Assembly: GCF_036971445.1 (NCBI RefSeq)
Contig: NC_091471.1
Span: forward strand, 370,698,001 to 370,762,000
From: Narcine bancroftii
Taxonomy: Eukaryota
DNA: 64,000 bases
Direction: 5' to 3'
Under the pieces are notes generated by a model. The model did not search any database. It had not been told where the DNA came from and saw only the letters and a list, made by a program, of their open reading frames with translations. The translations under genes were made by a program, and so were the position numbers. This document shows, piece by piece, positions 12,601 to 61,939 of this stretch. The first letter of the stretch is position 1; every line of letters begins with the position of its first letter.

Positions 12601-15600
12601 TAAAAGGTAACAAATGTGGCTATATTCTTCAGAAAGTAGAAAAGCAGATGTCGAATGATTAAAACTTTTTGAAATAAAGAATGTCAAATGAAAGAGAAGC
12701 ATTTTATGGTTAAGAAAGTCACATTGTGATCAATTAATTTCTTGAATTGTTTTAGGAGGTTTGAGCTTGTTCAGCTACAAATATTAATCAACCAGATTTT
12801 TCATAGTCACTTGACATAACTGGCTAATTTTCAGGATGTGTGGCCATGATAAACTTAGCACCAAGTCAAAGTGAATATATTTCTGGTTTATAAATATTGT
12901 TAGGAGATAACAATGTGGAAAACTGTCATTAGTGGAATCCTTGAGAACCCCATTCTGAGCTGATTGGAATTAGAATTGAATGTCATCTTAAATCTAAGTC
13001 AAAATCTAAGTTTGTGAATGACATCTAGCAGGAACAATTGCCAAAGTCTTTAACCAGCTTGCAATAAACGAGGTCTGAACAGGTTATGTTGATGAGTATC
13101 AAGTTCCAAGTAGAACATAAAAGGTGAAACAAACACTTGTAGGAAAAGAGAGTTGGAATTTGGTTTGAGAGCCAAGTCAAACACAAGGAAAGATTTTGGG
13201 GTGAGGAACTGCAATCTCTGTGGGGCAAGAGGATGAGGAGAAACATAGATCTGAAAAATTTAGATCCACAGATTTCTCCTAACAATCCACAAGATTCATG
13301 ATTGCAAGAAACAATTTAAGATGAAAGTACCAGAAGAAATGAGTAGAATTTTTGAACATATCTCCAGCAGGAGCGGCAAAATTAAAAATCATCTTTGTTT
13401 TAAGAAGTCAGAATCCTAAATTTACTTTCAAATAAATTCAGCTTACACGTTCTGACATCACAAATCAAATTGATGGGATTGTTCTAAGAGAATCCATGAA
13501 ATAGTGCAACGAAACACACCACCAGATAATTAATGGATTTCTTGTGCTGAAGTAGGCTTTGGGATTAATAATGGTTACATAGTCCAGCTGACCGGTGAGA
13601 AGATGCAGCATTTAACACCTCATCCAAAAATACAATACTTTCTGTCAATCCACTACCAGAGACTCAATATGGAGCATGTGCTCAAGCCAATGTGAACTGG
13701 GTCTTTGAATTTAGAATCTTTTCACTTCGTGCCATGCTTCCTCGGTCTAAAGTATTAGTACAATACCATGCTGTATCATTTTTTATAGATCGCCAAAGAG
13801 AATTCAGACTAATGGAAGGCAAGAAAAGAAAATGGAGTGTTGGTATCATGCTTGGAATAAACTACAGTCTCTCAAGAATTAAAGTTATTTTTAATTGACC
13901 AGTGATGCTTTGTTTATTTAATGTCACATTAAATGACAGTGATTCTGCCTGGATAAAGAGTGTAATAATACAGGACATCAGCATTTTCATATCTGCAATA
14001 TCTCATGGAATCTTTATGATGTCATGGAAGAATGTTGATATAAATTGAACATCCCATTCATGATGCAAAAACGAAAGCTTAATTTTTTTTGACAGAAAAA
14101 TTGTCCACTAACATTTTGGTAACCAATTCCCCTGGGATAAATAATTTGAAGTAATGGAATTCATATGTCTCTTTGACACCAGTGCCATAATAATCAAAGG
14201 GAACCAGCCCATGTCCATGCTTATCTATGGATAGTTATTTAATATGCAGAATTCTTTCAGCAGGATAATAGCAGGTAAAGAATTGATGCATAAAACATAC
14301 CTGATACAATAAGGAAAGTTCCTTTTCCAGTGACATCCAATAGTCGACCATTTTTTACTCCAGCAATGCAAAAGTAAGCTCCTGAGTCATTCACCTGGAG
14401 ATTGCTAAAGGTAATATTGATGGCTTTTCCATCTTCCTTTCCAATATCACACTCAAGACGATTCTTATATTGTTCGGCAATATGCTTGGTTTTTGCTGAG
14501 ACATAACACAGATCTACTTGAGATGAACTGTCTTTCTCAAATCTAGTACCTAGTAGGTTTCCTTGTGTAAATGTAATTTCACAGTTTATTGTAATGGATT
14601 CTCCTTTTATTGCTTGTTGGAAGCGTGGAGACTGGACAACAGAAACATCTGTAAAATACATGATTGAAGGTGTAGTCAGTACAGGCAGAAGGGGGCCAGT
14701 AAGCACGAAATAACATTTTGATTAATACAATTCATTATTTAAAAATGGATACTGAGAAGGTGAGAATCAACTCTCTGATCACTGGAGAAAACTGGTTCAA
14801 CAATTGAAGCTCTATTGGACCATGCTGGATAATGTNNNNNNNNNNNNNNNNNNNNNNNNNNNNNNNNNNNNNNNNNNNNNNNNNNNNNNNNNNNNNNNNN
14901 NNNNNNNNNNNNNNNNNNNNNNNNNNNNNNNNNNNNNNNNNNNNNNNNNNNNNNNNNNNNNNNNNNNNNNNNNNNNNNNNNNNNNNNNNNNNNNNNNNNN
15001 NNNNNNNNNNNNNNNNNNNNNNNNNNNNNNNNNNNNNNNNNNNNNNNNNNNNNNNNNNNNNNNNNNNNNNNNNNNNNNNNNNNNNNNNNNNNNNNNNATT
15101 ATCAGCATTATAAGGTATTAAAAAAGCTGTACTCTGTTTTCACATTCATGAAGGAAACGAGCAGTGATGATGTCAGGCTCCACTCTGCCTGTTTCTATTG
15201 TAAGATGCCGTTAAATAAGGTCTTTTATTTTCAAAAAAGTCATCATGGTCCGTGACAAATACAGGCTCATCAATATTCTGACGTGGCTTGGTACGAGGAT
15301 AAGGGAACCTCAGCAGCCCGTAGTAATGCAGGAACCTATGACAATTAGAAGAAATAAAGCTCAAGGTAGAAGCCAAGTGAAGCCTGAGGAACAGGGCTAG
15401 AATGTAAAAGATTTAATGATCAGTTTATTGTCAAACACACAAGTACAATGTGCATCTACTTGCTGCAGGTATTCAGGTATTTTGGGAAAATCTCCAACAG
15501 AATACATTAAATTAGCACAGTATGGAAACAGATAGTGATGAGGTAAAAGATAGATAATAAATCTTGACAGATACAGTTGGTGCAAAAACTAAAGTGGAAT

Positions 15601-17697
15601 TTCAGTCGTGCAGACAGGTCTTTTTGTGGTACCAGAGTAATTCATGATTAAGGTACTAAGAGGAAGTTCAAGAGCCTGATAGATGATGGAATGAGAGCGT
15701 TCTTGAACCTAGAGGTGCTGGACTTCTCGTAGTGATAAGAGGTTTTCAGCTCCGTCAATGCAACATGAAACCCTTTCTTCAAACACCTAGATCACTAACC
15801 CATATGCTGCACAATACCATGTTGCTTAGCTTGTAGCCATCCCCCTTGGTCAGGAACATGACCAAACATTTGTGTGCCTTACTTTGCCATATTTCAACAC
15901 TAATCTCACACCTCACATTTCCATTCATACCAAACTGTACAATCATGTACATTTCAAATAAGTTCAGAACACATTTTCCTCAATGGCAACTTGTATACAT
16001 TGATGTTTTTTAGACTCAAATAGGTTTATAAATAAAGTTCTGAATTAATGACATTATAACGGATCAATACTGAAATATTCAGCTGGCCATTAACCTAGAA
16101 ACCTACGACATGATATCTGGCTGGAATGGAGGGAGAAAGATTTCAGATCACTTCATCACTTATATTTATTGTCTCTTTTTCATTCAATGAAGTTCTGTAT
16201 ATGATTGTAGATTTTTTTGGACAAAGTACCTGTTCGATTGTAGCAAGTAAAAATCTCGGTACATATGCACATTGTATAACATATATAACAATAATGAGTT
16301 TATCATCAAATACATGATACAATAAGCATATTTGCACTGAGATTTTTACTTGCGAGAACTTGAAAAAGAGATCTGAAATCTTTCTCTCTCCATTCCAGAC
16401 AGATACCGTGTAGTAGGTTTCTACTTAAAACAGATTAAGACACTAAGACTTAAAACATGCAAATCATACATTTTCAGAAAAGTTACATTTCTCCCCCTGA
16501 TCCCTGGATCAGGAATACCCAATTATTTGAATAGGATTCAAGTGGTCCTTCAACTCATTCGAGACGCAACATTTCTGGAACCACCAGGTTAGTTGGCCTC
16601 TAACTTATGGGTGGTAAGGATCAGAAAGTAGGACAGCCCAGAACTCATGGCAATGATTCTGTCCACGAGCCATGGAGTAAAGGACAGAGGAAAGCAGATG
16701 AAAATTTGTGTTGAGTGATGGGGAAAGGAGCCCAAATGATAGCCCTCTTGAGCCCAAAAGGAAAGCTCAACATTCACACTTGTCTAAACTTTCTTGTTTG
16801 AAGATCTTCTGGTCTCAGGTCTTGTCATGATCGGTTTGCTGTAATTGGTATAGTCTCTGGATAAAATACCAGGTAAGACTGGCAATGTTTCAAAAGATTG
16901 ATCTGCAGATTTAAATTGACCACATAACACAGATAAGCAAGGGGTAGGCAATTTAAAAATAACCTTGCTTATGTTTCTTTCTGTTGATCTGATTACCTTT
17001 TCCATTATAAATCCATTGCATAAAATAGTGTGATTAGTAAAAACACACTGAAATGTTAGAGGAATTCAGCCAGTTTTACTACAATCACAGTGACTTCAGA
17101 CTTCCACCTTTCACTTCGTGCATCTAGTACCTTCCATTCAAAATGACATTATGAATTAAGCTGTGTAAGAAATCCACAGTTAAAATTTTTTTTTTTAACA
17201 ATTTCCTTCCGGCTGTGAAACAGTTGCAGTATGTTTTAAATAACGATTATAGTTCAAGATAAAACAAAGCAAGAACAGCTTGCATTTTTATAATTCCCCA
17301 CCACAAAAGTATGAAGAAATTAATCGCTGTCACAAAGCCCAGATCAACTAAAATTATTCTGAACTTTACTTAAGAGAAGAGTTTTAAGGAGAATCAGAGC
17401 AGAAGGAAACAGTGCAGTGATAATGTTTCTGAAAGGCAATCCAAAAGGTGGACTGAATGTGTCAGATCATTTTAGACAATTTACATTCCTCAGCAACTCT
17501 AAACCTAAAGAGGAGAAGGATATGAAAAATACACAATATTCTTGAGGACGAAGCACATGTTGTGATAAACATTTTTGGTGTACAAGTACGATTTAAAAGT
17601 TGAAAGATTTTGTAAGGAAACATTTCTTACCTGACTTTCCTTCAGTAGCTGTTACAAAGAACATCAGTGGAAGGCAAAGGAACATCGGTCCAGCCAT
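9516..17697 (-). CDS. CD7: T-cell antigen CD7-like type I membrane protein; 4 coding exons join(17631-17697,14301-14648,11333-11460,9516-9614), 213 aa
   Basis: Spliced by hand; all introns GT-AG with compatible phases (1,1,0); 642 nt including stop. Protein: MAGPMFLCLPLMFFVTATEGKS|DVSVVQSP...INC...LLGTRF...YKNRLEC...INITFSNLQVNDSGAYFC...DVTGKGTFLIVS|DPNSQ...ISCFKDPLLITMIILAVVGLLSTIVLLLWN|TRNHSQHKKSTLMQVPNLVYEDMNLVRTQSTA*. Shares recalled human CD7 hallmarks: MAGP start, QSP, no C-strand Trp, GxGT G-strand, VYEDM tail, 4 exons. Confidence 0.85.
10438..10955. repeat. G-rich minisatellite, ~26-30 bp unit (GGGATCCTGGAGTTCAGGTCCGTGGGGG), CD7-like intron 3
   Basis: Roughly 18 imperfect tandem copies; explains ORFs 10435..10999. 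Confidence 0.9.
11333..11460 (-). CDS. CD7: CD7-like exon: stalk plus transmembrane segment
   Basis: Acceptor ctttttccAG, donor AAT|GTAAGT; encodes DPNSQSNGEDNVKISCFKDPLLITMIILAVVGLLSTIVLLLWN; too short to appear in the ORF track. Confidence 0.88.
11504..12589. mobile_element. Solo LTR family A, in CD7-like intron 2, containing a (CA)n/(CACACG)n microsatellite at ~12196-12281
   Basis: TGT...ACA termini, near-TSD TGTT/TGCT, colinear with 2021-3032; one end lies 43 bp from the TM-exon acceptor. Confidence 0.75.
14301..14648 (-). CDS. CD7: CD7-like exon: IgV domain (116 codons)
   Basis: Acceptor ttttacAG, donor G|GTATGT, phase 1-1; B-strand Cys (INC), DSGAYFC, J-like GKGT; lies within ORF 14257..14706. 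Confidence 0.92.
14836..15097. other. Assembly gap (262 N) in the intron between the CD7-like leader and IgV exons
   Basis: Run of N. Confidence 1.
17631..17697 (-). CDS. CD7: CD7-like exon: signal peptide MAGPMFLCLPLMFFVTATEGKS
   Basis: ATG at 17697, hydrophobic core, phase-1 donor CAG|GTAAGA. A possible upstream acceptor (TTTATTTACACAG at 17800) suggests a further 5' UTR exon. Confidence 0.8.
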
Positions 17698-23776: not shown

Positions 23777-24864
23777 CTAACTCTTATTTCTTCAAAATCA
23801 TGTGACTTACAAGATCTCTCACAAACTTGTGTATCAAATGAAGGGATTTGGCTGATGAAGACATGCACAGACCCTTCATTCCACAGCACAATAAACATTT
23901 GATTGAGATTTCAACCCAGAACCTGGTTGATATCGATATCAATCCTCAACAAATCCACTTCAAAGGTCTACACCTGCTGATAGAAATGCCGGGAGAATTG
24001 AATAAAATAGAAACAATAAGCAATTATTTCATAGTAAACAAAAATTTAAATTATATAATTATTTGAGTCACATAGATAAATACATAAATTCTAAATAGAG
24101 AATAAAGTGTATAAAATATAGTTTCTAAAATTGAATGAAGATCAACAAAATAATTTTACATCTGGTTAAAATAGTTAGAAAGAAAATGACTGTTGTTCAA
24201 GTTTGTGTGGGTCCCACAGGTTAAGAACCAGACCAAAGTTGAGGTACAAAGCACACGTTTATTTCGGGGATGCAAACGGGATCACAGGGTCAATATGCCT
24301 GGCAAACCTATACACACATAAATACACAATACACAAGGTGTAAATATACACTTCAAATAATGAGGGAGGAACCAACAGAGACTGGGGGAAATTACATGAA
24401 CATACACATTCAACAATCAGATCAAGGTGATACTACATGCTCCCATCCGTTGTCCAGTTTGGACACGGCTCTAGCTACCTCGCCTCGAGACTCACCCCAA
24501 CCCAGTGTGAAAGGTGATACTTACATGCCACGAGGAGTCCAAAGAGGCAGAACAAAGGGGTACATGGTTCTTTATAATTCTTCATGCAGCACTGGGGGTG
24601 GGGCAATGGTAAAGGTCAGTATGGGCCCCATTGGTTGCTGTGGCCAATGGCTCGAAGCCAAGTGCAGGGACTCAGCAGGGGTGAACTGAGGTGATTCACC
24701 TGGGCCAATTGCGTGAAGGTCAGATCTAAGTCCAGGCGGGCTGTGTGGACTGCAGCACCTGGTGATTTAGGTGGGCCAATTGCAAGGGTCACCTTGATGG
24801 CTTGGGATGAGTCTTTGACCTTGATTGGCAGGTAGTGTGTCCTCCGAACAGGAGCGCAGCAGTG

Positions 24865-40996: not shown

Positions 40997-41140
40997 CACG
41001 AAAATACTTTCTCCTGAGTCTGCAACCAACAAGGATAAATATCGCTGCTAACAGGCCTCCAAAAACAATGCAGACCACAGTAATATCTTTCTTCTTCTTT
41101 GCTTCATTTTGCTGATGACTTGATTTATTCAAGCTTGAAT
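40997..41140 (-). CDS. SECTM1/B7-like gene: stalk plus transmembrane exon
   Basis: Acceptor tttttAG at 41141, phase 1; DSSLNKSSHQQNEAKKKKDITVVCIVFGGLLAAIFILVGCRLRRKYFR; probable donor G|GTACGA. Confidence 0.8.
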
Positions 41141-47100: not shown

Positions 47101-50100
47101 TGGTTATGGGGGTAGTGCCAAAGGATTGGAAGGTGGCGCATCTGGTTCCACTGTTTAAGAAAGGGTCCAAATGTAAACCTGGGAATTATAGGCCCGTGAG
47201 TCTGACGTCTGTGGTGGGTAAGTTGATGGAAAGTGTTCTGAGGGATGGTATTTACAAATATTTGGAGGTACAGGGATTGATAGGGAGTAATCAGCATGGT
47301 TTTGTCAGGGGTAGATCATGCCTGACAAACCTGATTGAGTTTTTCGAGGGGGTTACAAGAAAGGTTGATGAAGGGAAAGCTGTGGATGTTGTCTATTTAG
47401 ACTTTAGTAAATCTTTTGACAAAGTTCCCCACAGGAGGTTAGGAAAAAGGTGGAGGCATTAGGTATAAATAAGGAGGTAGTGAAATGGATTCAGCAATGG
47501 TTGGATGGGAGGTGTCAGAGAGTAGTGGTAGAAAATTGTTTGTCCAATTGGAGGCCGGTGACTAGTGGAGTTCCTCAGGGATCGGTCCTGGGTCCACTAT
47601 TGTTTGTTATATATATTAATGATATTGAAGTAGGGGTGGAGAATTGGATAAGCAAGTTTGCGGATGATGCAAAGATTGGTGATGTTGTGGACAGTGAGGA
47701 AGAATACTGTAGATTAAAAGGTGATTTAGGAAGGCCGGAGGTGTGGGCTGAAAAATGGCTGATGGAATTTAATACAGAGAAGTGTGAGGTGTTACATTTT
47801 GGAAAGGCAAATCTAAATAGGTCATATGCATTAAATGGTAGGCTATTGAGATGTGCAGAGCAACAAAGGGATTTAGGAGTTATGGTAAATAGTACCCTCA
47901 AGACTGATACTCAGGTAGATGGGGTGGTGAAGAAGGCATTTGGAATGTTGGCCTTCATAAATTGGAGTATTGAATTCAAGAGTAGGGAGGCTATGATGAA
48001 ATTGTACAAGGCATTGGTGAGGCCAAATTTCGAGTACTGTGTACAGTTTTGGTCACCAAATTATAGGAAAGATATAAACAAAATAGAGAGAGTGGAGAGA
48101 AGGTTCACGAGAATGTTGACAGGATTTCAAGGTTTGAGTTACAGGGAAAGGTTGTGCAGATTGGGGCTTTTTCTCTGGAGCGTAGAAGATTGAGGGGGGA
48201 CTTGATAGAGGTGTTTAAGATTTTAAAAGAGACAGACAGAGTAAATGTGGATAGGCTTTTTCAATTAAGAGTGGGGGAGATTCAAACTTGAGGCCATGGT
48301 TTAAGATTGAAGGGGGAAAATTATAAAGGGAGCATGAGGGGAAATTTCTTTATGCAAAGGGTAGTAGGGATGTGGAATGAGCTTCTGGCAGACGTGGTCG
48401 AGGCGGGATCATTGGTTACATTTAAGGAAAGACTGGATAGTTACATGGAGAGGAGGGGACTGGAGGGGTATGGACTGGGTGCTGGTCAGTGGGACTAGGA
48501 GGGTGGGGATTTGTTACGGCATGGACTAGTAGGGCCGAACTGGCCTGTTCTGTGCTGTAAGTGGTTATATGGTTATATGGTTATATGGGTCCAGAAGCCC
48601 TGCCATCTGTGGTAAGACCCAGACCGAGCATGATAACGACCTAAAAAAATTCTAGTATTGGACAAAGAACGCAATCTTACATTTATCTAGGGTAAATGTG
48701 TTTTCAATGCAACAGAACTACCCATTCTGGGCTACATTGTTCGCGAGGGCAAAATCCACCCCGATCCTGAAAGAATGGTACCCCTTAAGAAGTTGCCACC
48801 CCAAGACTCCGCAAAAGCTCTTAAGAGGTGTATGGGATTCTTTTCCTACTACTGCAAATGAGTACGTGACTACGCTACGAAGGCACACTCCTTGTTTGAC
48901 ACAAAATCTTTCCCTCTCTCTCCAGCAGCCCTGAAAGCTTTCAAGAGAATTAAAACTGATATTGCCAAAGCTGCACTCTCGTCCATCGACAAGGATTTTC
49001 TGCTCCGTGGAAACTGATGCCTCAGATTGTGCTTTAGCAAGAACCTTAATCTAAAGGATTAATCTTCGCTAGGATTCTACTAAATTGAATAATACCTAGT
49101 GTCGCCGAGAATATTCTCCCAGAATCACAGTGCGGCTTTCGCGCAAACAGAGGAACTACTGACATGGTCTTTGCCCTCAGACAGCTCCAAGAAAAGTGCA
49201 GAGAACAAAACAAAGGACTCTACATCACCTTTGTTGACCTCACCAAAGCCTTCAACACCGTGAGCAGGAAAGGGCTTTGGCAAATACTAGAGCGCACCGG
49301 ATGTCCCCCAAAGTTCCTCAACATGATTATCCAACTGCATGAAAACCAACAAGGTAGGGTCAGATACAGCAATGAGCTCTCTGAACCCTTCTCCATTAAC
49401 AATGGCATGAAGCAAGGCTGTGTTCTCGCACCAACCCTCTTTTCAATCTTCTTCAGCATGATGCTGAACCAAGCCATGAAAGACCCCAACAATGAAGACG
49501 CTGTTTACATCCAGTACCGCACGGATGGCAGTCTCTTCAATCTGAGGCGCCTGCAAGCTCACACCAAGACACAAGAGAAACTTGTCCGTGAACTACTCTT
49601 TGCAGACGATGCCGCTTTAGTTGCCCATTCAGAGCCAGCTCTTCAGCGCTTGACGTCCTGCTTTACGGAAACTGCCAAAATGTTTGGCCTGGAAGTCAGC
49701 CTGAAGAAAACTGAGGTCCTCCATCAGCCAGCTCCCCACCATGACTACCAGCCCCCCCACATCTCCATCGGGCACACAAAACTCAAAACGGTCAACCAGT
49801 TTACCTATCTCGGCTGCACCATTTCATCAGATGCAAGGATCGACAACGAGATAGACAACAGACTCGCCAAGGCAAATAGCGCCTTTGGAAGACTACACAA
49901 AAGAGTCTGGAAAAACAACCAACTGAAAAACCTCACAAAGATAAGCGTATACAGAGCCGTTGTCATACCCACACTCCTGTTCGGCTCCGAATCATGGGTC
50001 CTCTACCGGCACCACCTACGGCTCCTAGAACGCTTCCACCAGCGTTGTCTCCGCTCCATCCTCAACATCCATTGGAGCGCTTTCATCCCTAACGTCGAAG

Positions 50101-53100
50101 TACTCGAGATGGCAGAGGTCGACAGCATCGAGTCCACGCTGCTGAAGATCCAGCTGCGCTGGATGGGTCACGTCTCCAGAATGGAGGACCATCGCCTTCC
50201 CAAGATCGTGTTATATGGCGAGCTCTCCACTGGCCACCGTGACAGAGGTGCACCAAAGAAAAGGTACAAGGACTGCCTAAAGAAATCTCTTGGTGCCTGC
50301 CACATTGACCACCGCCAGTGGGCTGATAGCGCCTCAAACCGTGCATCTTGGCGCCTCACAGTTTGGCGGGCAGCAACCTCCTTTGAAGAAGACCGCAGAG
50401 CCCACCTCACTGACAAAAGGCAAAGGAGGAAAAACCCAACACCCAACCCCAACCAACCAATTTTCCCCTGCAACCGCTTCAACCGTGTCTGCCTGTCCCG
50501 CATCGGACTTGTCAGCCACAAACGAGCCTGCAGCTGACGTGGACTTTTTACCCCCTCCATAAATCTTCGTCCGCGAAGCCTAGCCAAAGAAATCAACAAA
50601 TATTCAAGGTTTCCCTTCACGATATCCTGCCCTGACATCTCGTCATCGTCTGTTATTAAAGCACTTAACTGAATCTTCAGTATTTTTGTTTTTCCCAGTT
50701 ACATTCATACAGAGGCTCAGCATTTATGAGCGCAGAGCTACGCCAGGCTCTGTTACACAAGGGGATTTCCACCAGCCGCCCCACGAGCTACAACCCCCAG
50801 GGCAATCGGCAGGTCGAAAGGGCTAACGCCACTGTCTGGAAGACTGTTAACCTCGCGCTAAAGACACATGGTTACCCTGTTACCCGGTGGCAGGAGGTGC
50901 TGCCTGAGGCGCTACATTCTATTTGGTCCCTATTATGTACAACCACAAATCAAACACCTTATGTTTACTTTTCCTAGGAAATCAGGGACTGTGATGGACT
51001 GGCCAGCCTGTCTATCTGAACCTGGAACCATGCTGCTGAAGAGACACGCTCGGAAGCGTAAAACGGACCCTCTAGTCCAGCCAGTTCAACTACTGCACAC
51101 TAATCCCAATTATGTCCATGTTAAATTTCCAGATGGGAGCACGGACACAGTACCCCTAAGAGATCTAGCCCCGCCTAGTTCACCCTCTCTGCTCGCCTTC
51201 TACCAATAAAATTGAAGTGCCAGTTAATTAAGAAATCTATGTAATTAACCTGTAATCATGGCTTTTATTAGTAGAAACTCAGTAGTACAATAATGAATGA
51301 TGATGGGCCAAGGGGAGTGTCTTTAGTGGTAGAGATAATACATGTCCAATGTCAGTAGAGCAGTCTAAGCACAGTGAAAGACTGACAGCTCGACACCGAT
51401 TCATCACAAATATTTATCATGAAAATGTTTATGAACACAGAGGTATATCCCACTTTACAAAACTAGAGTGCTCCTACGGAACCTTTCAAAAGCTGAAATG
51501 GTGGAAAGCAAAGAAGTAATTATCATTGATTTCCATGGGAAAAATTTTTTTTAGTGTTCCCAGACCCAAAAAACAGCACAACAAATCCTACCAAATAACA
51601 CCTAAAACCTAAAATAATATAGTAAAAGCAGGAATTATGTGATAAATACACAGCCTATATAAAGTAGAAATAATGTACATACCGTGTAGTTTCACTTACC
51701 AAAATCAGGAAGACAGCGAGTTTTGACAGCCCTGTGGCCACCCCACCACCACCCCACATGGACCGCCCCACCACTGCCCCACACTGACTGCCCCACCACC
51801 ACCCTGTGGCCACCCCATCACCACCCCACATGGACCGCCCCACCACTGCCCCACACTGACTGCCCCACCACCACCCTGTGGCAACCTGCCACCACCCCAC
51901 ATGGACCCGGCCCATCACTGCCCCACACTGACTGCCCCACCGCCACCCTGTGGCAACCTGCCACCACCCCACACAGACCGCCTCACCACTCCCCCACACT
52001 GACTGCCCCACCATCACCCCACACGGACCTCCCCACCACTGCCCCACACTGACTCTCCCGCCAGCCGCCCTGTAACTGCCCTGCCGGCCACCCTGTGACC
52101 ACCCCACTGGCCAACATGTGACAACCCCGTGACCTCCCCCTACCCCCACTACCCAAGTAGCCCGATAACAGCTCCACTGGCTGCTTTTTCATAAAATGAA
52201 AATCTTTTTGTAAAACCAAACACATTTCTTAGTAAAAAGAGAATTTGCATAAACCAAGTATTCATAAAGCAGGGTATGTCTGTCGTAAAATGGGGTATAC
52301 CTGTACTTGAGAAATATTTCTTCACTTCATATTTATTCTCAGCATCATTCCACACGGCACAGGTATAGTTATGCTCTGAGTTGCTATCCGATATTCCGAT
52401 TGGAAGTACGCTGGTGATATTGAACAGCCCTTGAGAGGTTTCTTCTATATTGGTTTCTACATCAGGTGCGAAGCTCCTTCTTCCATCAACACTCCAGTGA
52501 ATCTGAGCAGAAGGATATCCAATTGTCTGACAAAAGATCGCTTTTTCCATTTTTCTGAAATTTTGGATTGTCATTTTTGGCAAAGTGTACGGAGCTAAAA
52601 AAGGATCACATCTTGTTACTGAATAACATTGGCCAGATATTTCACTACCTCAAACTCTGGAACAATTAGGAGTAGCCAGTTTTCAAAAAGAAAAATAATC
52701 ACGGGGAAGTAGGACCATTACCCACCTTTAAATGTTACACTGATAGCAGCAGAGTTGAAGCCAAGGTTTGTTTCCAAATCATAGTGGTATCTCCCTCCGT
52801 CAGAGACTTGTGTTTTCTGAATTACCAGCGATATATTTTGTAAATCTTGACAAAGTAATTTAATTCGATTCTGTTTTTCGCTGCCACTTTCAAGAGTGTT
52901 AAAGTAAAAAACAGACTCATTTCCTTCATCTTTAAATAGTTGAAGTTTTATAAATGTACTTGGCTTTATTGTTTCCAAACTGCATGGTAGAATAGTATCC
53001 TCATTAAATGTTCCTGTCACAGTCTTGTCGCACTTCAAAGTCATGAACTCTGAAAATCAACAACTTCCATTAACATCTATCTTCTGTTTACAATTAGTGG

Positions 53101-53202
53101 AGAATGAGCCATTGATCGAGAAGTGGTTCACTACTTACGTTGTGCAGATTGAGTACTTGCATACAGCATGAAAACAAAGCATATTTTTAGGTCTACGTCC
53201 AT
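40997..53202 (-). CDS. SECTM1-like / B7-family-like type I membrane protein (leader-IgV-IgC-TM); join(53139-53202,52726-53049,52301-52594,40997-41140) plus an unresolved cytoplasmic end
   Basis: Four GT-AG exons, all phase 1, giving 275 open codons. IgV has C-x15-C and DGGRYHY (no F-strand Cys). IgC has APYTLP..C..GYP..W..GLFNITS.L..NYTC, as in B7 proteins. TM ITVVCIVFGGLLAAIFILVGC is followed by RLRRK. Lies upstream of the CD7-like gene on the same strand. Confidence 0.8.
41328..43140 (-). mobile_element. Rex1/Babar LINE remnant with internal insertions
   Basis: (AGAATC)n tail at 41328, HPGHALFTL, NTGTPQGC; colinear with 3580-5125. Confidence 0.65.
46029..48586 (+). mobile_element. CR1 LINE (partial endonuclease plus RT, frameshifted)
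   Basis: RT motifs in ORFs 46944..48193, (GGTTATAT)n tail, 16-bp near-TSD GGGTCCAGAAG(T/C)CCTG at 46013-46028 and 48587-48602. Confidence 0.9.
49061..50591 (+). mobile_element. Young RTE-clade LINE, 5'-truncated, 457-aa open RT frame
   Basis: Near-identical protein to the 29087-31379 copy. Confidence 0.93.
51728..52060. repeat. C-rich minisatellite, ~70-bp compound unit (CCCTGTGGCCACCCCACCACCACCCCACATGGACCGCCCCACCACTGCCCCACACTGACTGCCCCACCACCA)
   Basis: About 5 imperfect copies; explains ORFs 51655..52149. Confidence 0.85.
52301..52594 (-). CDS. SECTM1/B7-like gene: B7-type IgC exon (98 codons)
   Basis: Acceptor ccttttttAG, donor G|GTATAC; APYTLPKMT...IFCQTIGYPSAQIHW...GLFNITSVL...NYTCAVWN. 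Confidence 0.9.
52726..53049 (-). CDS. SECTM1/B7-like gene: atypical IgV exon (108 codons)
   Basis: Acceptor ttttcAG, donor G|GTGGGT; QFMTLKCDKTVTGTFNEDTILPC...IKLQLFKDEGNESVFY...NISLVIQKTQVSDGGRYHYDLET...ISVTFK. Confidence 0.88.
53139..53202 (-). CDS. SECTM1/B7-like gene: signal peptide exon MDVDLKICFVFMLYASTQSAQ
   Basis: ATG at 53202, donor C|GTAAGT (phase 1), 89-nt intron to the V exon. An acceptor (ttttttgtgtatcagcAG, ~53221) lies just upstream, implying a non-coding first exon. Confidence 0.8.
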
Positions 53203-54899
53203 TTACAGAATTCAGTTCTCCTGCTGATACACAAAAAACATTAAACATCCAGAAATCAAACAAAGCCTCTTTTTGTTTTGCTTGTGTGACACAGTATATT
53301 GCATATCATAAGGAACATATAAGGAACAATAAATCACGTCAACTACATTGGTGTTGCTAAAAAAAATGACTGATCAGAATTAATAACTACGGTTAAATCA
53401 AATAATTTTATTTGTTGCTTTCCTAAAAGTATCACAGCAAGATCCCTACATCAACACAAACAGTTAATAACTTGTATTTCTCCAAGAGAATTTCCCATCC
53501 ACCAACTATTGGCTTCAGACGCTTTATTCAACTCGCCGTGAGTACTTGAGTTAGCTCTAACAGGAAGTGGCAGAATTTCCTTCCATAACTCAAATGGAAT
53601 ATTAGAAAAACAGATTAATTTCTGGTCATGTTATTCCATGATATCCTATCAGAATCTTGGGTTTCTCATTCAAGAATAAACAATATACTTCCCTAGACTG
53701 ACGTGAGCTGAGACAAATATTGGACAAGCAACTTGAGCAATCAGGAAAGCCTCCATAAAGTAACCCTCCAGTTTTCTCAGCATTTAATGATCTCCTTGAG
53801 GCTCCTGGAAGTTTCATTTGCTGTGTGACTTCAAAGTGCAGATGCAAACATTCAAATCAGGTGCAATTCACCATGATTTGCTTTATTGTAACATCATCTC
53901 TGCATTCCCAATCACACCAAGTAACTTTTCACCCCTCGCTTCATATCGAGAATTGGCTAACTCTTCCTAAAAAATATTCCATGTCTCTGTTTATCACTCT
54001 TTGATGAAGAGGCTCCGAGAGACCCACACCTTCAGAGAAAAATAAAATTCACCTCATTTCTTTCTTTAGATTCAACTTTAGATTCTCCTGCAAGAGGAAA
54101 CATCCTTTCTCTATCACATGAGGAAAACTCAAGATATTATACCTTTTAACTAATATCCCTCTCATTCTTTGAACTTCCAGCAAAGATTTGTCTTGTCTGT
54201 CTAACTTCACCTGCTCATTACTAGATTTAGGGTTTGGGTCTTTAAAAATATTGAATAAAATAAATTAGATAAAGTTGTGTTCCTTTAACTTGAAAATATT
54301 GCTCAGTCATTGTCACAGTGGGCCAAGGCATGTTAGGCCAGAAGCCACGTGGGCCTTAGACTGAAAAGATGAGAACCACTGGGCCTAATGAATCTTCTTT
54401 GGAGAACCCCAAACATTTGCATTCTTTCTTAAATCCTCACAATAATTTGGATTTTGAATCACTGATACCCTATTATCACTGAAGCATTACCTCTCCACTT
54501 TTCATACAATTATAGAGAGCTCCACAGCACAGAAGCAGTCCGCAAGCCCCAACTTGTGCCCGCTGACCAAGCTAGTTGCATTTGCCTCATTCCACTGGGG
54601 GCTTATATCCTTCTAACCCTTTCCTGCCTTTACCCAAGTGTCTTTTAAACATTACAATTTTACTTGCCTTTATTACTTCCTCTGGCAATTCATTCCATAC
54701 ACCCATCACCATCTGCACCGTTCAAGTCCCTAATAAATCTTTCCAGTCCCACCTTAAGTCTGTGCCTTGAGTTTTATATTCCCTTATTCTGGGGAAAAAA
54801 AGACTATGACTATTTAACCTATCTCTGCTCCTCAAGATTTTATGAGATCCCCTGAGATTCCGATGCTTCAGAGCACAGTCCTATCCAGAACTTGTAAGA

Positions 54900-57800: not shown

Positions 57801-60800
57801 AGGAAAACTGGTAGCAAAACATGAGGAAATGGCCGAGGCATTAAACAAATATTTTGTGTCAGTCTTTACGGTGGAAGACACGTCCAGCATGCCCAAGTGC
57901 GGAGTTAAGGATGCGAATGTTGGGGAGGGCCTTGATAAAATAGTTGTTACAAAGGAAGTAGTGATGGAGAAACTAATGGGACGAAAGCCAGACAAATCAC
58001 CTGGTCCTGATGATATGCATCCAAGGGTTCTGAAGGAAATGGCACAAGTTAGAGTTGATGCATTGGTGGTCATAGACCAAAATTCCTTGGATTCTGGGCA
58101 GGTCCTGGCAGACTGGAAAACAGCAAATGTCACGCCACTTTTTAAGAAGGGATGTAGGGAGAAGACTGGAAATTATCGGCCAATTAGCTTGACGTCTGTA
58201 GTTGGAAAAATGCTTGAAGCCGTCATTAAAGATGAAATAGTGAAACTTTTGGAACGTAAGGGTTCAATCAGGCAGACGCAGCATGGTTTTAGTAAGGCAA
58301 GATCTTGTTTGACAAACTTGTTAGGATTCTTTGAGGATATAATGGGTGCGGTGGATAGAGGGGAACAGGTTGATGTTGTCTATTTGGATTTCCAGAAAGC
58401 GTTTGATAAGATGACACACAAGAGACTTATCAGTAAGTTACAGGAAAGTGGAGTCCGGGGAAGTCTATTAGCATGGATCGAAAATTGGTTGTCTGACAGG
58501 AGGCAGAGAGTTGGGATAAATGGGAGTTTTTCAGGTTGGCAGAGAGTGGTAAGTGGGGTGCCGCAGGGGTCAGTGTTAGGCCCACAACTGTTCACCATTT
58601 ACATTGATGACTTGGAGGAGGGGACAAAATGTGCTGTAGCCAAGTTTGCGGATGACACCAAATTGAGTGGAAGAGCAAACTGTAATGAGGATGTGGAGAG
58701 TCTGCAGAGGGATAGAGTTAAGCTGGATGAGTGGGCAAAGGTCTGGCAGATGGAGTTCAATGTTAGTAAGTGTGAGGTTATCCACTTTGGCAAGAAAAAT
58801 AAAAGAGCTGAATATTATTTAAAGGGTGAAAAACTACAGCATGCTGTTGTACAGAGGGACTTGGGAGGGCTTGTGCATGAATCGCAAAAAGTTAGATTGC
58901 AGGTGCAGCAGGTTATTAAGAAGGCAAGTGGAATGTTGGCCTTCATCGCGAGAGGAATTGAATTCAGGAGTAGGGAGGTAATGTTACAACTGTATAAGGT
59001 ACTGGTGAGACCGCACCTGGAGGACTGTGTCCAGTTCTGATCTCCATATTTGAGGAAGGATACACTGGCTTTGGAGACGGTCCAGAGGAGGTTTATTAGG
59101 TTGATCCCTGGGATGAAGGGGTTGACTTATGATGAAAGATTAAATCGTCTCAGATTGTATTTGCTCGAGTTCAGAAGAATGAGAGGAGATCTTATAGAAA
59201 CATATAGGATTATGAAGGGTATGGATAGGATAGATGTAGGAAGGTTTTTTGAGCTGGCCGGGGAAACTAAAATGAGAGGACACAGTCTCAAGATTCGGGG
59301 GAGTAGATTTAGGACAGAGATGAAGAAAAATAGTTTTTCTCAGAGTAGTGAATGTTTGGAGTTCTCTATCCAGGGAAGTAGTTGAGGCTGCCTCATTAAA
59401 CATACTTAAAATTCAGTTAGATACATTTTTACAAGATAGAGGAATTAGGGGATACGGGGAGAAGGCAGGTAGGTGGAGTTAGGTCATAAATTGGATCAGC
59501 CATGATCTTATTGAATGGCAGAGCAGGCTCGATGGGCCATTTTTGGCCTACTCCTGTTCCTACTTCCTATGTCCTATGTATCCCTTCTTTTTGCCTTTCT
59601 AATTTCCTTCTTAAGGTTTTTTCTGCAATCTATGTAATAATTATATCTTATCCATTTTTTGCTTCTTAAATTTAATAAATGTCCCCCTCTTATCCCGAAC
59701 CAACTTCGTTTTTTTCCCAGAAAACCACGGTTCCCTTAGGCTTTTGACCTTGCCTTTCGATCTGACTGGCACGTAAAGATCCCGAACTCACAATATCTCT
59801 TCTTTAAATACCCTCCAAATCTCCTCTACATCCTTTCCAGCAAAAAAGATCAGCCTATATAATTTTCAGCAAATCCCTTCTAATTTCTTCAAATCTAGCC
59901 TACCCCCACTCGAAGACCTTCAACCTCGGACCTGACCTATCTCTTTCCATATTTAAGTTGAAGCCATGATCAGTGGATCCAAAGTTCTCACCAATCTGCC
60001 CTATTCCGTTCCCTAACAATAGATCTAACTCTGCCTCCCCTCTAGTAGACACTTCAACCTACTGGTGTATAAAGCAATCCTGCACAAAGACTAAGCCAAC
60101 CTGCCCTCTCACTGATTGTGTTTCCCAATCAATGTTCAGAAAATTGAAATCCCCAACTATCAAAACCCTATTTCTACTGTACATCTCAGTTATTTCCCTG
60201 CACATTTGCTCTTCCGGTTCCCTATCCTTTTTTGGTGGCCTATAATAGACCCCTATATTTGTAGCCTCACCTTTCTTATTTTTTAGTTCAACCCACAGAG
60301 CCTCGCGCGATGAGTCTACCTCAGGACCGCTGTAATATCTTCCCTGACAAGCAACGCCACACCTCCCCCTCGTACCCCGCCAATTCTGTCATGTCTAAAG
60401 CAGCGAAATCCCGGAATATTTAGATGCCAGTCACAACCTTCCTTCAACCACGTCTCACAAATTGCTCTCAGATCATAAGGCCACGTGTCAATCCACACCA
60501 TTAGTTCATCCACCTTATTTACCACACTCCTTGCATTGAAATAAATGCATCTCAGAGATCTTTCACCTTTAACTTCCTGCCTCTCACCCTCTCTACAATT
60601 GTTACTACGGCCACTATTTATTACCTGCTGCTGTTCCACCTCCAGATCGTAAAAAAGCCATTTTTCTTTGCCTAAAGACTTTGTTCTTGCTATCCTCCCT
60701 GACACGAACCCTGGTCCCCAACCTTACTGGTTTAAAGCCCTTGCCAGGAGACTGGTACCTCTGGGATTTAGATGTAACCCATCCTGACAGTCGAGGTCCC

Positions 60801-60860
60801 ATCTCCCCCAGAAACGGTCCCAGTGTCCAAGAACAGTGCATTCCAATTCCCTGAGCAAAA
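54900..60860 (-). mobile_element. Older CR1 LINE (ORF1 esterase remnant, endonuclease, deleted RT, 3' tail), split by a younger CR1
   Basis: Pieces 54900-55977 and 59580-60860 join in ORF2 (IRKAKRR|ADKVEVN); CIYFNARS..ICETWL at 60316..60705; DGLHLN at ~60770; AACCATAT tail at ~54905. Confidence 0.8.
55985..59579 (+). mobile_element. Near full-length CR1 LINE (ORF1 SGNH esterase, ORF2 APE plus RT, disrupted)
   Basis: VCCLPGA..HVCTND..DGLHLN; LYLNASSI..AITETW; 553-aa RT ORF with FADD; (CCTATGT)n tail. Confidence 0.92.
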
Positions 60861-61369
60861 CTTTCCGCATTGTTCCCTCCAGCTGATTGGTGCATTTGTG
60901 GTCACCACTCTCTAATTGCTCAACAATGGATGGCAGAGCGTCTGCTTCTCAATCACCCAACTTGACAGGAGAACTGTGTTGGGAATTTTGAAGCAGGAGT
61001 TTGCCGAGATGATGGAAAACAAATAGAGGGCAAGGGTCGGGAATGAGAGGACACGTTAATATTTGAAAGTTCTCACTTCCAGTGCTCTTGAACAGCCCAG
61101 TCAAGCCACCCACTCATCTGCACAAGTTCCAACCGCGGTCTGGCATGTCACCTTCATCATTCGCAAGCCCAGCTGTCGAGAGAGACAAACATTGTTGAAA
61201 TGGAAGCCAAACGCTTCCAGTTTCTCTCCTTGGGGCGTGGAGTGTGAGCCGACTTGACCTGGGCAGAGCAGCGCCGTCAGATGCTGCGATTGCGTGAATC
61301 GGACCCAGCCGACCTCTTCCTCTCCGACTTGCTCTTTCGCTGCCAAAACGCGATCCCGAAGCTTTGTAC

Positions 61370-61600
61370 CTGACCTTGAACTTCCCCAGTTGTCCGGCCG
61401 CAACTCCCGTCACTCGCTGCCCACCAGACCGCTCCAGGAAATGGGAGCCTGGAAATGATCCAGGACACCAGCAAAAAGTGCAGGAAATCCCCAGCATTGG
61501 GCAAGTTCGCAAACCACTCCCATTTCTTGAAACAACTCGCTTTTCCCAGCCTGGCCGCACTTCTCCCGCTTTCACTTTCCGAGAAGACGGAGACCAGATG
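61370..61600 (-). promoter_or_regulatory. Putative interferon/NF-kB-responsive promoter and non-coding exon 1 of the SECTM1/B7-like gene
   Basis: CpG-rich segment not recognisable as a repeat (~61100-61760). Donor CAG|GTACAA at 61370/61369; kB site GGGGATTTCC (61483-61492, minus strand); ISRE/IRF-E GGAAAGTGAAAG (61569-61580, minus) overlapping GAS TTCCGAGAA (61577-61585); near-GAS TTCTTGAAA (61524-61532). Confidence 0.6.
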
Positions 61601-61939
61601 CAGGGTCCATCCGAAGTCCGACAACTGAGCTTGCGGATTGACCTCAGCCTTTGCAAACAGGCTGCGGATCCCAACACCTGACGGCGGGAGGTAGGGCGAA
61701 TTTGTGGCAGAAACCACATCCCATGTCAACAGTCAAAACTCAAGGGGACGCCAACGTTCTCGTTCAGTCCAGCACATTGTAATGTTAACCATTTCTTTCC
61801 ATCTGTGCCACTGGAAAGCCCATCAAGGCTGAGAGCTCAATCCCTCCCTCAGGACCGACCTTGCAACAGTTTATGGTGATTCAAGCCGATCAATGGTGAC
61901 TCTTGGTCTGAGACGAGTCATTGATATCAATTTAATTCT

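What the first reader, a model, noticed from the sequence alone, without database searches (positions are those of the whole stretch)
52301..53049. SECTM1-type V domain joined to a classical B7 IgC domain: a possible link placing SECTM1 in the B7 family
Seen: the V exon has A-strand and B-strand Cys (KCDKTVTGTFNEDTILPC, C-x15-C), no C-strand Trp, and Tyr in place of the F-strand Cys (DGGRYHYDL). Recalled human SECTM1 shows the same pattern (ICTEGVVSVSWGENTVMSC, C-x16-C; IKLRAHGQESAIF vs IKLQLFKDEGNESVFY; LVIKGARDSHAGLYMWHL vs LVIQKTQVSDGGRYHYDL). The next exon is a typical B7/PD-L1 IgC (APY..C..GYP.A...W...LFNITS.L...YTC), which mammalian SECTM1 lacks. Inference: ancestral SECTM1 was a V+C B7-family molecule that lost a symmetric phase 1-1 C exon in the lineage to mammals. 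CD7/SECTM1 would then be a divergent counterpart of CD28/B7.
Basis: partly seen in the sequence, partly recalled or inferred. Interest (0 to 1): 0.85.

Follow-up and report, generated by a model that had tools for sequence, protein, structure and literature searches.

The report
Ray B7-type ligand gene beside CD7
An electric-ray gene next to a CD7-like receptor gene encodes an expressed B7-family surface ligand whose outer domain has the unusual cysteine pattern published for mammalian SECTM1, so SECTM1 (described as placental-mammal-only) may be an old B7-family gene, although no direct SECTM1 comparison could be run.

Summary
On the minus strand lie a V exon (53049-52726) and a B7-type IgC exon (52594-52301), both phase 1-1. 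Transcript contigs from four runs of one study splice them leader-V-C-TM. The V domain has Cys6 and Cys22 (C-x15-C), Leu at the C-strand Trp position and Tyr at the F-strand Cys position.

This is not species-specific decay. All 26 elasmobranch and otocephalan-teleost V domains placed on the tree lack the F-strand Cys, and the A-strand Cys is invariant in 38 of 38 family domains. An eel and percomorph clade keeps the canonical disulfide as well.

Both domains match B7/butyrophilin proteins (CD276, PD-L1, BTN2A1). The downstream neighbour is a CD7 orthologue: it has a V-J domain and a VYEDM tail, and its catshark orthologue matches solved CD7 at E 2.9e-11.

The SECTM1 link rests on published SECTM1 hallmarks, the CD7 neighbourhood and natural C-less skate forms. 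No SECTM1 sequence was available by reference, so direct homology is untested, and no tetrapod intermediate was found.

Verdict: certainly a B7-family member; a SECTM1 counterpart with probability about 0.6. The scan has not noted this on other DNA.

The parts
61077..61106 (-). 3' end of an upstream non-coding exon of the ligand gene. Only the last 30 nt are verified and the exon start is not determined.
   Evidence: The loose end beyond 53223 in the transcript contigs of all 4 runs maps uniquely to 61077-61106.
53139..53223 (-). Leader exon of the ligand gene. ATG at 53202, signal peptide MDVDLKICFVFMLYASTQSAQ, ends in phase 1.
   Evidence: Contig pieces 53139-53223 and the joint 53139|53049; translation; aligns to the leader of skate P0004.
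52726..53049 (-). IgV exon, phase 1-1. It has an A-strand Cys6 and a B-strand Cys22, no C-strand Trp, Tyr89 in place of the F-strand Cys, and an extra Cys66.
   Evidence: AF2 model with mean pLDDT 87.5 and IgV strand order. Nearest folds are nectin/CD155, VSIG4, B7-H6, B7-H3, BTN and B7-H4 V domains.
52301..52594 (-). B7-type IgC exon, phase 1-1 ((A)PY...C...GYPxAxIHW...YTC).
   Evidence: CD276 7e-10, PD-L2 5.7e-4, PD-L1 8e-4; joints.
40997..41140 (-). Stalk and transmembrane exon, phase 1-1 (SSLNKSSHQQNEAKKKKDITVVCIVFGGLLAAIFILVGCRLRRKYFR).
   Evidence: The transcript loose end after 52301 maps to 41111-41140. Translation. The exon end is inferred from the GT donor. The sequence resembles the TM regions of P0003 and P0004.
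17632..17697 (-). CD7-like gene, coding part of the leader exon (MAGPMFLCLPLMFFVTATEGKS).
   Evidence: tblastn of P0080, 100% identity.
14301..14648 (-). CD7-like gene, V-J type Ig exon (..DSGAYFC..TGKGTFLIVS), phase 1-1.
   Evidence: It is 100% identical to Narcine bancroftii P0079 and P0080.
11333..11460 (-). CD7-like gene, stalk and transmembrane exon.
9519..9614 (-). CD7-like gene, cytoplasmic exon with the PI3K-type motif (..PNLVYEDMNLVRTQSTA).
   Evidence: The stretch VYEDMNLVRTQS is identical in catshark P0081.

Best explanation
The two exons belong to an expressed type I membrane protein of the lesser electric ray (Narcine bancroftii) with the B7 layout: signal peptide, IgV, IgC, TM and a short tail, one domain per phase-1 exon. 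It belongs to a fish-wide B7-family branch with an invariant extra Cys on the A strand. Automatic pipelines name its members PD-L2-like, CD276-like, butyrophilin-like or zgc:174863. In elasmobranchs and otocephalan teleosts the canonical B-F disulfide and the C-strand Trp are gone, so the B-strand Cys is most likely bridged to the A-strand Cys within one sheet (inferred). The gene lies head-to-tail upstream of a CD7 orthologue. The most likely function is therefore a cell-surface ligand whose V domain engages the V domain of the neighbouring CD7, which signals through its YEDM motif (inferred). On this reading the gene is the fish counterpart of mammalian SECTM1. SECTM1 would be a B7-family gene that lost its symmetric IgC exon on the way to mammals, as some skate paralogues have done independently.
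For: Gene model and expression: spliced contigs in 4 runs.

B7 membership: Pfam. C exon against the PDB gives CD276 7e-10, then PD-L2 and PD-L1. The family profile matches CD276 across V+C at about 1e-21 per unit, PD-L1 at 4.8e-24, BTN1A1, PD-L2 and CD80. The V-only profile gives BTN2A1 5.5e-5, BTN3A and B7-H4. The fold is closest to nectin, VSIG4, B7-H6, B7-H3, BTN and PD-L1 V domains, Z 13-16.

Family conservation: C6, G12, C22, L74, G85, Y87 and G96 are invariant in 29 sequences. The A-strand Cys is present in 38 of 38 domains. The family is monophyletic against BTN-like V domains, support 99/95.

CD7 neighbour: V-J exon, stalk/TM exon and a tail reading PNLVYEDMNLVRTQS, conserved between ray and catshark. 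Catshark P0081 matches the solved 'T-cell antigen CD7' chain at E 2.9e-11 (46 bits), and that chain is the only single-V chain in the top 60. The two-species profile gives 1.5e-11. CD7 binds PI3-kinase through YEDM (Lee et al. 1996, as cited in PMC2193045).

Linkage in a second species: the catshark ligand is GCB61899.1 and the catshark CD7-like is GCB61903.1, four accession numbers apart, and both RefSeq proteins lie on a contig of the same length, 170,482,615 bp.

SECTM1 hallmarks from PMC4603632: invariant Cys38 and Cys55, no classical disulfide, G113xYxWxLxGxQ123, one Ig-like region followed by a TM, and CD7 as neighbour and receptor. The window has C6/C22 and GxYxYxL at comparable spacing (C22 to G85 is 63 residues, against 58 in SECTM1).

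Precedent for loss of the C domain: skate V-TM and V-V-TM forms.

Complex prediction of ligand V with CD7-like V gave weak support. The score was 0.45 and the best of 3 controls 0.00. The mark was reached by 51 of 78 solved complexes and 2 of 108 mismatched pairs. At 0.60 or under it was reached by only 5 of those 78 solved complexes and by all 4 mismatches that passed (of 180). The runs agree in at least 88% of their contacts and the partner's pLDDT is at least 81.
Against: No SECTM1 sequence could be compared, so homology to SECTM1 rests on motifs, spacing and synteny. The phmmer search of 1.8 billion representatives gave only fish family members and BTN-like proteins at E <= 1e-3. The word-based profile search found no tetrapod member. 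The SECTM1 motif matches only in part (W to Y, G to T, Q to L), and G-x-Y is generic to V domains. The eel and percomorph clade keeps the canonical disulfide, so loss of the F-strand Cys can recur or marks an old paralogue. The complex score is in the weak band, and two IgV domains can be paired from memory by the model. Gene order in human (SECTM1 upstream of CD7 on the same strand) comes from my own recollection. The paper's text says only that the two genes are neighbours.
Confidence: 0.6

Rival explanations
1. It is a fish-lineage B7/butyrophilin-family ligand with no orthology to SECTM1. The A-B cysteine pair and the missing F-strand Cys resemble SECTM1 by convergence. Mammalian SECTM1 arose separately, for example from another V-set gene near CD7. 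The ray protein may still bind the neighbouring CD7-like receptor or some other receptor.
For: No SECTM1 was retrieved by sequence search. The published view is that SECTM1 is eutherian-specific, with tBLASTn negatives in fish and birds (PMC4603632). Within the family the canonical disulfide state differs between clades, which shows that this character is labile. Many B7 and CD28 family members present in fish have been lost in mammals (PMC11599192).
Against: The combination is rare: an A-strand Cys, loss of the F-strand Cys and of the Trp, a Gx YxAromatic xL motif, and a position directly upstream of CD7. In about 170 related V domains examined, the A-strand Cys occurred only in this family. 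Convergence in the fold and in the genomic neighbour at once is the less economical explanation.
Confidence: 0.32
2. The neighbour is not CD7 but another CD28-family receptor (CD28X, CD28H or a CD28H-like gene, some of which also carry YEDM). The pair would then be an ordinary B7/CD28-type pair unrelated to CD7 and SECTM1.
For: YEDM also occurs in CD28H and, as EYEDM, in CD28X (PMC11599192). The Narcine V exon alone did not bring CD7 into the top 60 PDB hits.
Against: The diagnostic CDR3 motifs of all described CD28-family members are absent from both the ray and the catshark protein. These are PPP in CD28, CTLA4, ICOS and CD28X, and E-I-P in CD28H, CD28HL1 and CD28HL2. The ITIM/ITSM tails of PD-1 and CD28HL3 are also absent. 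A full J motif (GxGTxLxV) is present, which that paper says is generally absent from the CD28 family. Solved CD7 is the best single-V match for the catshark orthologue.
Confidence: 0.06
3. The odd cysteine pattern reflects a decaying or non-functional gene copy in this species.
For: Loss of the canonical Ig disulfide is often seen in pseudogenes.
Against: The frames are open and the splice sites intact. Spliced transcript contigs are abundant in 4 runs. The same pattern is conserved in species of sharks, rays, skates and otocephalan teleosts. The V exon folds confidently as an IgV.
Confidence: 0.01

Closest known systems
SECTM1 (K12), the CD7 ligand of eutherian mammals
   Same: Type I membrane protein. 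Its N-terminal Ig-like domain has two closely spaced invariant Cys (17 residues apart; 16 here), no classical B-F disulfide and a GxYx(W/Y)xL F-strand motif. The gene lies next to CD7 (PMC4603632).
   Different: SECTM1 has a single Ig-like region and no IgC. It is described as eutherian-specific. The rest of its motif (xGxQ) is not matched here.
B7-H3 (CD276), PD-L1 and PD-L2
   Same: IgV-IgC-TM layout. The IgC begins APY and carries GYPxAxxxW and YxC. These are the best PDB matches for the C exon and for the V+C family profile.
   Different: These proteins keep the canonical V disulfide and the Trp, and they lack the A-strand Cys. Identity is only about 20-25%, so the ray gene is not an orthologue, despite automatic names such as 'CD276 antigen' or 'PD-L2-like' given to its relatives. 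Their receptor genes are not adjacent to them.
Butyrophilins (BTN2A1, BTN3A, BTN1A1) and fish BTN-like genes
   Same: These are the closest V domains by sequence. The IgC matches the Pfam butyrophilin Ig-C model.
   Different: There is no B30.2 domain or long tail here. The family forms a separate clade, support 99/95, with its own cysteine pattern.
Teleost zgc:174863 genes (uncharacterised)
   Same: Same family by profile search (1.8e-87 to 1.6e-29). They have the V-C-TM layout and the invariant A-strand Cys.
   Different: Percomorph and eel members keep the canonical disulfide and Trp, while otocephalan members share the ray's atypical pattern. No paper holding the name was found.
CD7 (for the neighbouring gene)
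   Same: A single V-J domain, a short stalk, a TM and a short tail with VYEDM. The solved CD7 chain is the best single-V PDB match for the catshark orthologue.
   Different: The ray and catshark proteins are annotated as 'Ig kappa chain V region' or 'uncharacterized'. The ray V domain has an extra Cys pair, and the stalk is short rather than proline-rich.

Membership tests
B7 family (B7/butyrophilin superfamily) | Type I membrane protein with an N-terminal IgV and a membrane-proximal IgC, one domain per exon | tested here: met
   Exons leader, V, C and TM are spliced in transcripts. Pfam gives V-set and Ig-C. The TM exon is translated.
B7 family (B7/butyrophilin superfamily) | Phase-1 introns flanking the Ig exons | tested here: met
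   The V exon is 324 nt and the C exon 294 nt, each 2 nt + whole codons + 1 nt. The joints are confirmed by contigs.
B7 family (B7/butyrophilin superfamily) | Sequence similarity of the IgC to B7 IgC domains | tested here: met
   CD276 7e-10, PD-L2 5.7e-4, PD-L1 8e-4. Pfam C2-set_3 3.6e-7 and CD80-like C2-set 3.5e-5.
B7 family (B7/butyrophilin superfamily) | Sequence or fold similarity of the IgV to B7/BTN V domains | tested here: met
   V-only profile: BTN2A1 5.5e-5, BTN1A1, BTN3A, B7-H4. V+C profile: CD276 about 1e-21 per unit. VIA Z scores: B7-H6 15.1, B7-H3 14.4, BTN 13.8, with nectins and VSIG4 equally high.
B7 family (B7/butyrophilin superfamily) | Canonical B-F disulfide and C-strand Trp in the V domain | tested here: not met
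   Tyr89 and Leu37 occupy those positions. This is a general Ig feature rather than one specific to B7.
B7 family (B7/butyrophilin superfamily) | Binds a single-V receptor on lymphocytes | tested here: inconclusive
   Complex prediction with the neighbouring CD7-like V gave weak support: 0.45 against a best control of 0.00.
SECTM1 | Two invariant Cys about 17 residues apart at the N-terminal side of the Ig-like domain (Cys38, Cys55) | tested here: met
   C6 and C22 are 16 apart and invariant in the family. The SECTM1 feature is taken from PMC4603632.
SECTM1 | No classical inter-sheet disulfide | tested here: met
   Tyr stands at the F-strand Cys position. SECTM1 has W117 there.
SECTM1 | Motif G113xYxWxLxGxQ123 | tested here: inconclusive
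   The window reads G85-R-Y-H-Y-D-L-E-T-N-L. G, Y and L match, W becomes Y, and G and Q do not match. Hypanus P0003 has GxYxYxLxTxQ. G-x-Y is generic to V domains.
SECTM1 | A single Ig-like region followed directly by a TM (no IgC) | tested here: not met
   An IgC exon is present and spliced in. Skate paralogues P0012 and P0068 do have V-TM.
SECTM1 | Gene adjacent to CD7 | tested here: met
   The CD7-like gene lies at 17697-9519 on the same strand, downstream of the ligand gene. CD7 identity is supported.
SECTM1 | Significant sequence similarity to SECTM1 proteins | not testable with these tools
   No SECTM1 sequence was available by reference. None appeared.
SECTM1 | Binds CD7; interferon-inducible | not tested
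   Only the weak complex prediction is available. The promoter was not examined.
CD7 (neighbouring gene) | Single V-J type domain, stalk, TM and a short tail with YEDM | tested here: met
   P0080 is identical to the window's exons. It has GKGTFLIVS and LVYEDM. YEDM is the PI3K site of CD7 (reference in PMC2193045).
CD7 (neighbouring gene) | Sequence similarity to CD7 | tested here: met
   Solved 'T-cell antigen CD7' chain 12hp_C: E 2.9e-11 with catshark P0081 and 1.5e-11 with the ray+catshark profile. It is the only single-V chain in the top 60. The ray V exon alone did not bring CD7 into the top 60.
CD28X / CD28 family (neighbouring gene) | CDR3 motif: YxCx6PPPx4/5GxG in CD28X, PPP or E-I-P in the other members | tested here: not met
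   YFCIAGVKNGRLLDVTGKG and YYCVFGIRHPTISDKYGQG contain neither PPP nor EIP. The motifs are taken from PMC11599192.

The most novel reading that the evidence does not exclude
SECTM1 and CD7 form an ancient, physically linked B7-type ligand and V-J receptor pair that predates the split of cartilaginous and bony vertebrates. SECTM1 would then not be eutherian-specific. It would be a B7-family gene, marked by an A-strand Cys, that lost its IgC exon on the lineage to mammals, and CD7 would be a CD28-like costimulatory receptor whose ligand gene has stayed next to it for more than 400 million years.
Probability: 0.55. Interest if true: 0.75.

Novelty: new variant of a known kind. Interest (0 to 1): 0.65.

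Why it matters
SECTM1 is the only known protein ligand of CD7, a clinically important T and NK cell marker and CAR-T target. Its origin is unexplained. The one dedicated phylogenetic study calls it eutherian-specific and could relate its Ig-like domain only weakly to CD79A and to an antibody light chain. A fish V-C-TM gene with the same rare cysteine pattern, sitting beside a CD7 orthologue, would place SECTM1 in the B7 family. It would add CD7/SECTM1 to the costimulatory ligand-receptor pairs present in early jawed vertebrates. It would also give an example of a receptor and ligand gene pair held in linkage over deep time. Finally, it names a family of fish genes (zgc:174863 and the 'PD-L2-like' or 'CD276-like' models) that are currently mis-annotated or unnamed, and it predicts their receptor. 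That prediction can be tested directly with recombinant proteins.

Tried and rejected
The gene next to CD7 or next to the ligand could therefore not be inspected in other species. Only accession order and shared chromosome in the catshark were available.

2. The ESM Atlas gave only generic V-set clusters for the V exon. For the skate V-TM form, with Ig Pfam families skipped, it gave unrelated viral and other Ig-like clusters. No SECTM1 cluster was shown, so this was uninformative.

3. Foldseek against viral structures was tried because a SECTM1 homologue is reported in an equine molluscum contagiosum-like virus (PMC13223139). It returned only generic viral Ig proteins.

4. The word-based profile search with the family alignment found 18 proteins, all skates and teleosts, and no tetrapods. 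It even missed known shark members.

5. tblastn of the two exons against the window found no paralogous V or C exon.

6. The window ends (1-9500 and 60500-64000) hold retroelement ORFs only. No conserved flanking gene is there to anchor synteny.

7. A structure of the CD7-like protein from a two-sequence alignment was too poor to use (pLDDT 44.6).

8. Searching papers for a printed human SECTM1 peptide found none.

9. Identity of the neighbour as CD28X, CD28H or another CD28-family member was rejected on the CDR3 motifs.

Full report
**What is in the sequence.** The finding lies on the minus strand. Reading the reverse complement gives four coding exons:
- A leader exon. Its ATG is at 53202 and it encodes MDVDLKICFVFMLYASTQSAQ.
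- A V exon at 53049-52726, 324 nt, with 107 whole codons.
- An IgC exon at 52594-52301, 294 nt, with 97 whole codons.
- A stalk/TM exon 11 kb further on, at 41140-40997.

All Ig exons are phase 1-1. The C exon reads (A)PY...FCQTIGYPSAQIHW...GLFNITSVL...YTCAVWN. Pfam calls the first exon V-set (1.6e-7). It calls the second a butyrophilin-type Ig-C (3.6e-7) or CD80-like C2-set (3.5e-5).

**The gene is real and expressed.** Four public runs from one study hold 68% of the sampled words of the 903-base stretch. That is the share expected if only exons are present. When laid on the window, their contigs cover exactly 53223-53139, 53049-52726 and 52594-52301. The joints are 53139|53049 and 52726|52594, with GT..AG introns on the minus strand, and the introns have zero depth. 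The loose end after 52301 maps uniquely to 41111-41140, the predicted TM exon. The loose end before 53223 maps to 61077-61106, an upstream non-coding exon. The runs' RNA label is the tool's guess, but the intron-less joined form at contig depths of 68 to 551 over empty introns is what cDNA gives. I did not build or search a joined protein.

**Species.** The CD7-like V exon in the window is 100% identical to two RefSeq proteins of Narcine bancroftii, the lesser electric ray. The window therefore comes from that genome.

**The family.**
- phmmer of the V exon against 1.8 billion representative proteins found 53 hits at E <= 1e-3. The best are 285-300 residue proteins of sharks, rays and skates, at 40-54% identity.
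- Their source names differ from one another: PD-L2-like, PD-L1-like, CD276 antigen, butyrophilin 1A1-like, uncharacterized. None is a clear orthologue of a named B7.
- Teleost members carry the name zgc:174863. No paper holding that name was found.
- In an alignment of 29 members, the invariant residues are C6, G12, C22, L74, G85, Y87 and G96.
- Over 38 family V domains the A-strand Cys is invariant. The F-strand position is Tyr in 26, Phe in 5 and Cys in 7.
- Among about 170 V domains from the hit list, the A-strand Cys occurs only in this family.
- A maximum-likelihood tree, built with the trait columns masked, separates the family from BTN-like V domains with support 99/95.
An eel plus percomorph clade (support 99/97) keeps the canonical B-F cysteines and the Trp in addition to the A-strand Cys. 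Elasmobranchs and otocephalan teleosts lack them. One skate domain (P0067) also has Cys at the F-strand position.
- The atypical pattern is therefore old and widespread, not a species-specific decay. It either arose more than once or marks an old paralogue. The A-strand Cys is the real hallmark of the family.

**B7 membership.**
- The C exon alone matches human B7-H3 (CD276) at 7e-10, then PD-L2 and PD-L1.
- A profile of the whole family matches each V-C unit of B7-H3 across both domains at about 1e-21. It matches PD-L1 from signal peptide to TM at 4.8e-24, and then BTN1A1, PD-L2 and CD80.
- A V-centred profile has BTN2A1 as its best solved relative (5.5e-5), followed by VSIG4, TIM-1, BTN1A1, BTN3A and B7-H4.
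- An AlphaFold model of the V exon is confident (mean pLDDT 87.5) and has the IgV strand order.
- That model superposes best on 'ligand-type' V domains: CD155 and the nectins, VSIG4, B7-H6, B7-H3, BTN, B7-H4 and PD-L1, at Z 13-16.
- Layout, exon phases and both domains therefore place the gene in the B7/butyrophilin superfamily. Within it the gene forms a branch of its own.

**The neighbour is CD7.**
- Downstream on the same strand lies a four-exon gene: leader 17697-17632, V-J exon 14648-14301, stalk/TM exon 11460-11333 and tail exon 9614-9519.
- Its product (P0080, 213 residues) ends ...PNLVYEDMNLVRTQSTA.
- The catshark orthologue (P0081, 39% identical) keeps VYEDMNLVRTQS exactly. It has GVYLRR on the C strand and the J-like motif GQGTMLLVS.
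- YEDM is the PI3-kinase site of CD7 (Lee et al. 1996, as cited in PMC2193045). YEDM also occurs in CD28H and CD28X (PMC11599192).
- The diagnostic CDR3 motifs of all nine CD28-family members (PPP or E-I-P) and the ITIM/ITSM tails are absent here. A full J motif is present, which that paper says is generally missing from the CD28 family.
- The decisive test was the PDB sequence search. Catshark P0081 matches the solved 'T-cell antigen CD7' chain over the whole V domain at E 2.9e-11 (46 bits). That is the only single-V chain in the top 60; every hit ranked above it carries two or more V domains (scFv, diabody and similar constructs).
- The ray+catshark profile gives 1.5e-11. The ray V exon alone is more divergent and did not bring CD7 into its top 60.
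- I take the neighbour to be a CD7 orthologue, with probability about 0.8.
- In the catshark, the ligand (GCB61899.1) and the CD7-like protein (GCB61903.1) are four accession numbers apart. Both RefSeq proteins lie on a contig of the same length, 170,482,615 bp. This suggests the linkage is conserved between sharks and rays, but it is an inference from numbering.

**The link to SECTM1.**
- I could not obtain any SECTM1 sequence by reference, so no direct comparison was run. This is the main gap.
- What can be tested is the published description (PMC4603632). SECTM1 has one Ig-like region (residues 33-133) with two invariant cysteines, Cys38 and Cys55, and no classical disulfide. It has the invariant motif G113xYxWxLxGxQ123, then a TM. 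Its gene neighbours CD7, its receptor.
- The ray V domain has C6 and C22, one residue closer together. An aromatic residue stands where the F-strand Cys should be, and the motif reads GxYxYxLxTxL.
- The spacings are similar. From the second Cys to the motif Gly is 63 residues here against 58 in SECTM1. From the motif Gly to the domain end is 22 against 20.
They could not be verified letter by letter.
- Against the link, G-x-Y is generic to V domains and only part of the motif matches.
- No sequence search retrieved SECTM1. At roughly 25-30% identity over 100 residues, a miss in a library of 1.8 billion is expected and says little.
- The 2015 study reports no SECTM1 homologue outside eutherians.
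- No paper in the searchable library links SECTM1 to the B7 or butyrophilin families or describes a fish SECTM1. A 2026 SECTM1 review holds neither 'B7 family' nor 'eutherian'.

**Loss of the C exon.** The C exon is symmetric (phase 1-1), so removing it keeps the reading frame. The family shows that this happens in nature. Skates have paralogues with V-TM (P0012, P0068) and V-V-TM (P0001, P0064 to P0067) and no IgC. A basking-shark isoform is V-only. This makes the proposed history plausible but does not show it for mammals.

**Mechanism.**
- Shown: an expressed V-C-TM B7-family protein, and a CD7 orthologue with a conserved YEDM tail encoded next to it.
- Inferred: Cys6 at the end of strand A and Cys22 on strand B lie on neighbouring strands of one sheet (DSSP). 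They probably form an intra-sheet disulfide that replaces the lost B-F bridge. This is the arrangement the 2015 authors modelled for SECTM1.
- Inferred: the V domain binds the V domain of CD7 in trans and triggers PI3K signalling.
- A complex prediction of the two V domains gave weak support. The score was 0.45 and the best of 3 controls 0.00. The mark was reached by 51 of 78 solved complexes and 2 of 108 mismatched pairs. At 0.60 or under it was reached by only 5 of those 78 solved complexes and by all 4 mismatches that passed (of 180). The runs agree in at least 88% of their contacts and the partner's pLDDT is at least 81. The controls were not Ig domains, so this moves my odds only slightly.

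**Verdict.**
- The B7 reading is secure, about 0.95.
- The SECTM1 reading is the best available explanation, about 0.6. It rests on a rare combination of structural features plus conserved linkage to CD7, not on a direct homology test.
- The main rival is a fish B7 branch that resembles SECTM1 by convergence, about 0.3.
- If the SECTM1 reading holds, it overturns the 'eutherian-specific' description of SECTM1 and adds CD7/SECTM1 to the ancient B7-type costimulatory pairs.

**Limits.**
- The word-based protein search was shallow.
- The scan's earlier notes on this locus are from this same window only.

Noticed in passing
window 52850-52852 (codon of Cys66 in the V exon): The V exon has a third Cys (KLLCQD) besides the A- and B-strand Cys. 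It is shared with skate V-only paralogues and the basking-shark form, but not with other sharks or the stingray orthologue. This gives an odd number of Cys, so it may be a free thiol or an interchain bond.
   Followed up: partly
proteins P0015, P0069, P0071-P0075 (eel and percomorph fishes): One clade of the family keeps the canonical B-F cysteines and the C-strand Trp together with the A-strand Cys, which makes three Cys in the V domain. One skate domain (P0067) also has Cys at the F-strand position.
   Followed up: yes
window 11911-12048 and 2419-2580: The annotated isoform X2 of the CD7-like gene (P0079) replaces the stalk/TM exon with an exon at 12048-11911, giving a TM-less product. A 72% identical copy of that stretch lies at 2580-2419, so the alternative exon looks repeat-derived.
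   Followed up: partly
window 51655-52150: A minisatellite of CCCCACCAC-rich units about 60 nt long lies directly downstream of the IgC exon, at the start of the 11-kb intron.
   Followed up: no
window 29141-31405 (-), 49089-50537 (+), 24825-25827 (+): Several near-identical LINE reverse-transcriptase ORFs lie inside the ligand gene's large intron and in the intergenic region between the ligand gene and the CD7-like gene. They look like a young retrotransposon family.
   Followed up: no
window 472-900 and 61945-62784: Gag-like ORFs with a CCHC zinc knuckle, and related ORFs at both window ends, are LTR-retroelement remnants. No conserved flanking host gene was seen in the window.
   Followed up: partly
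window 14836-15097: An assembly gap (262 N) lies in intron 1 of the CD7-like gene. It was left untouched.
   Followed up: no
window 61077-61106 versus 61370-61600: Transcript contigs show that the exon spliced to the leader exon ends at 61077. One contig (run X1) carries 2053 letters upstream of the leader exon, so the 5' structure may be longer or alternative.
   Followed up: partly
window ~12250-12300: A (TG/CA)n microsatellite lies in the intron between the V exon and the stalk/TM exon of the CD7-like gene.
   Followed up: no
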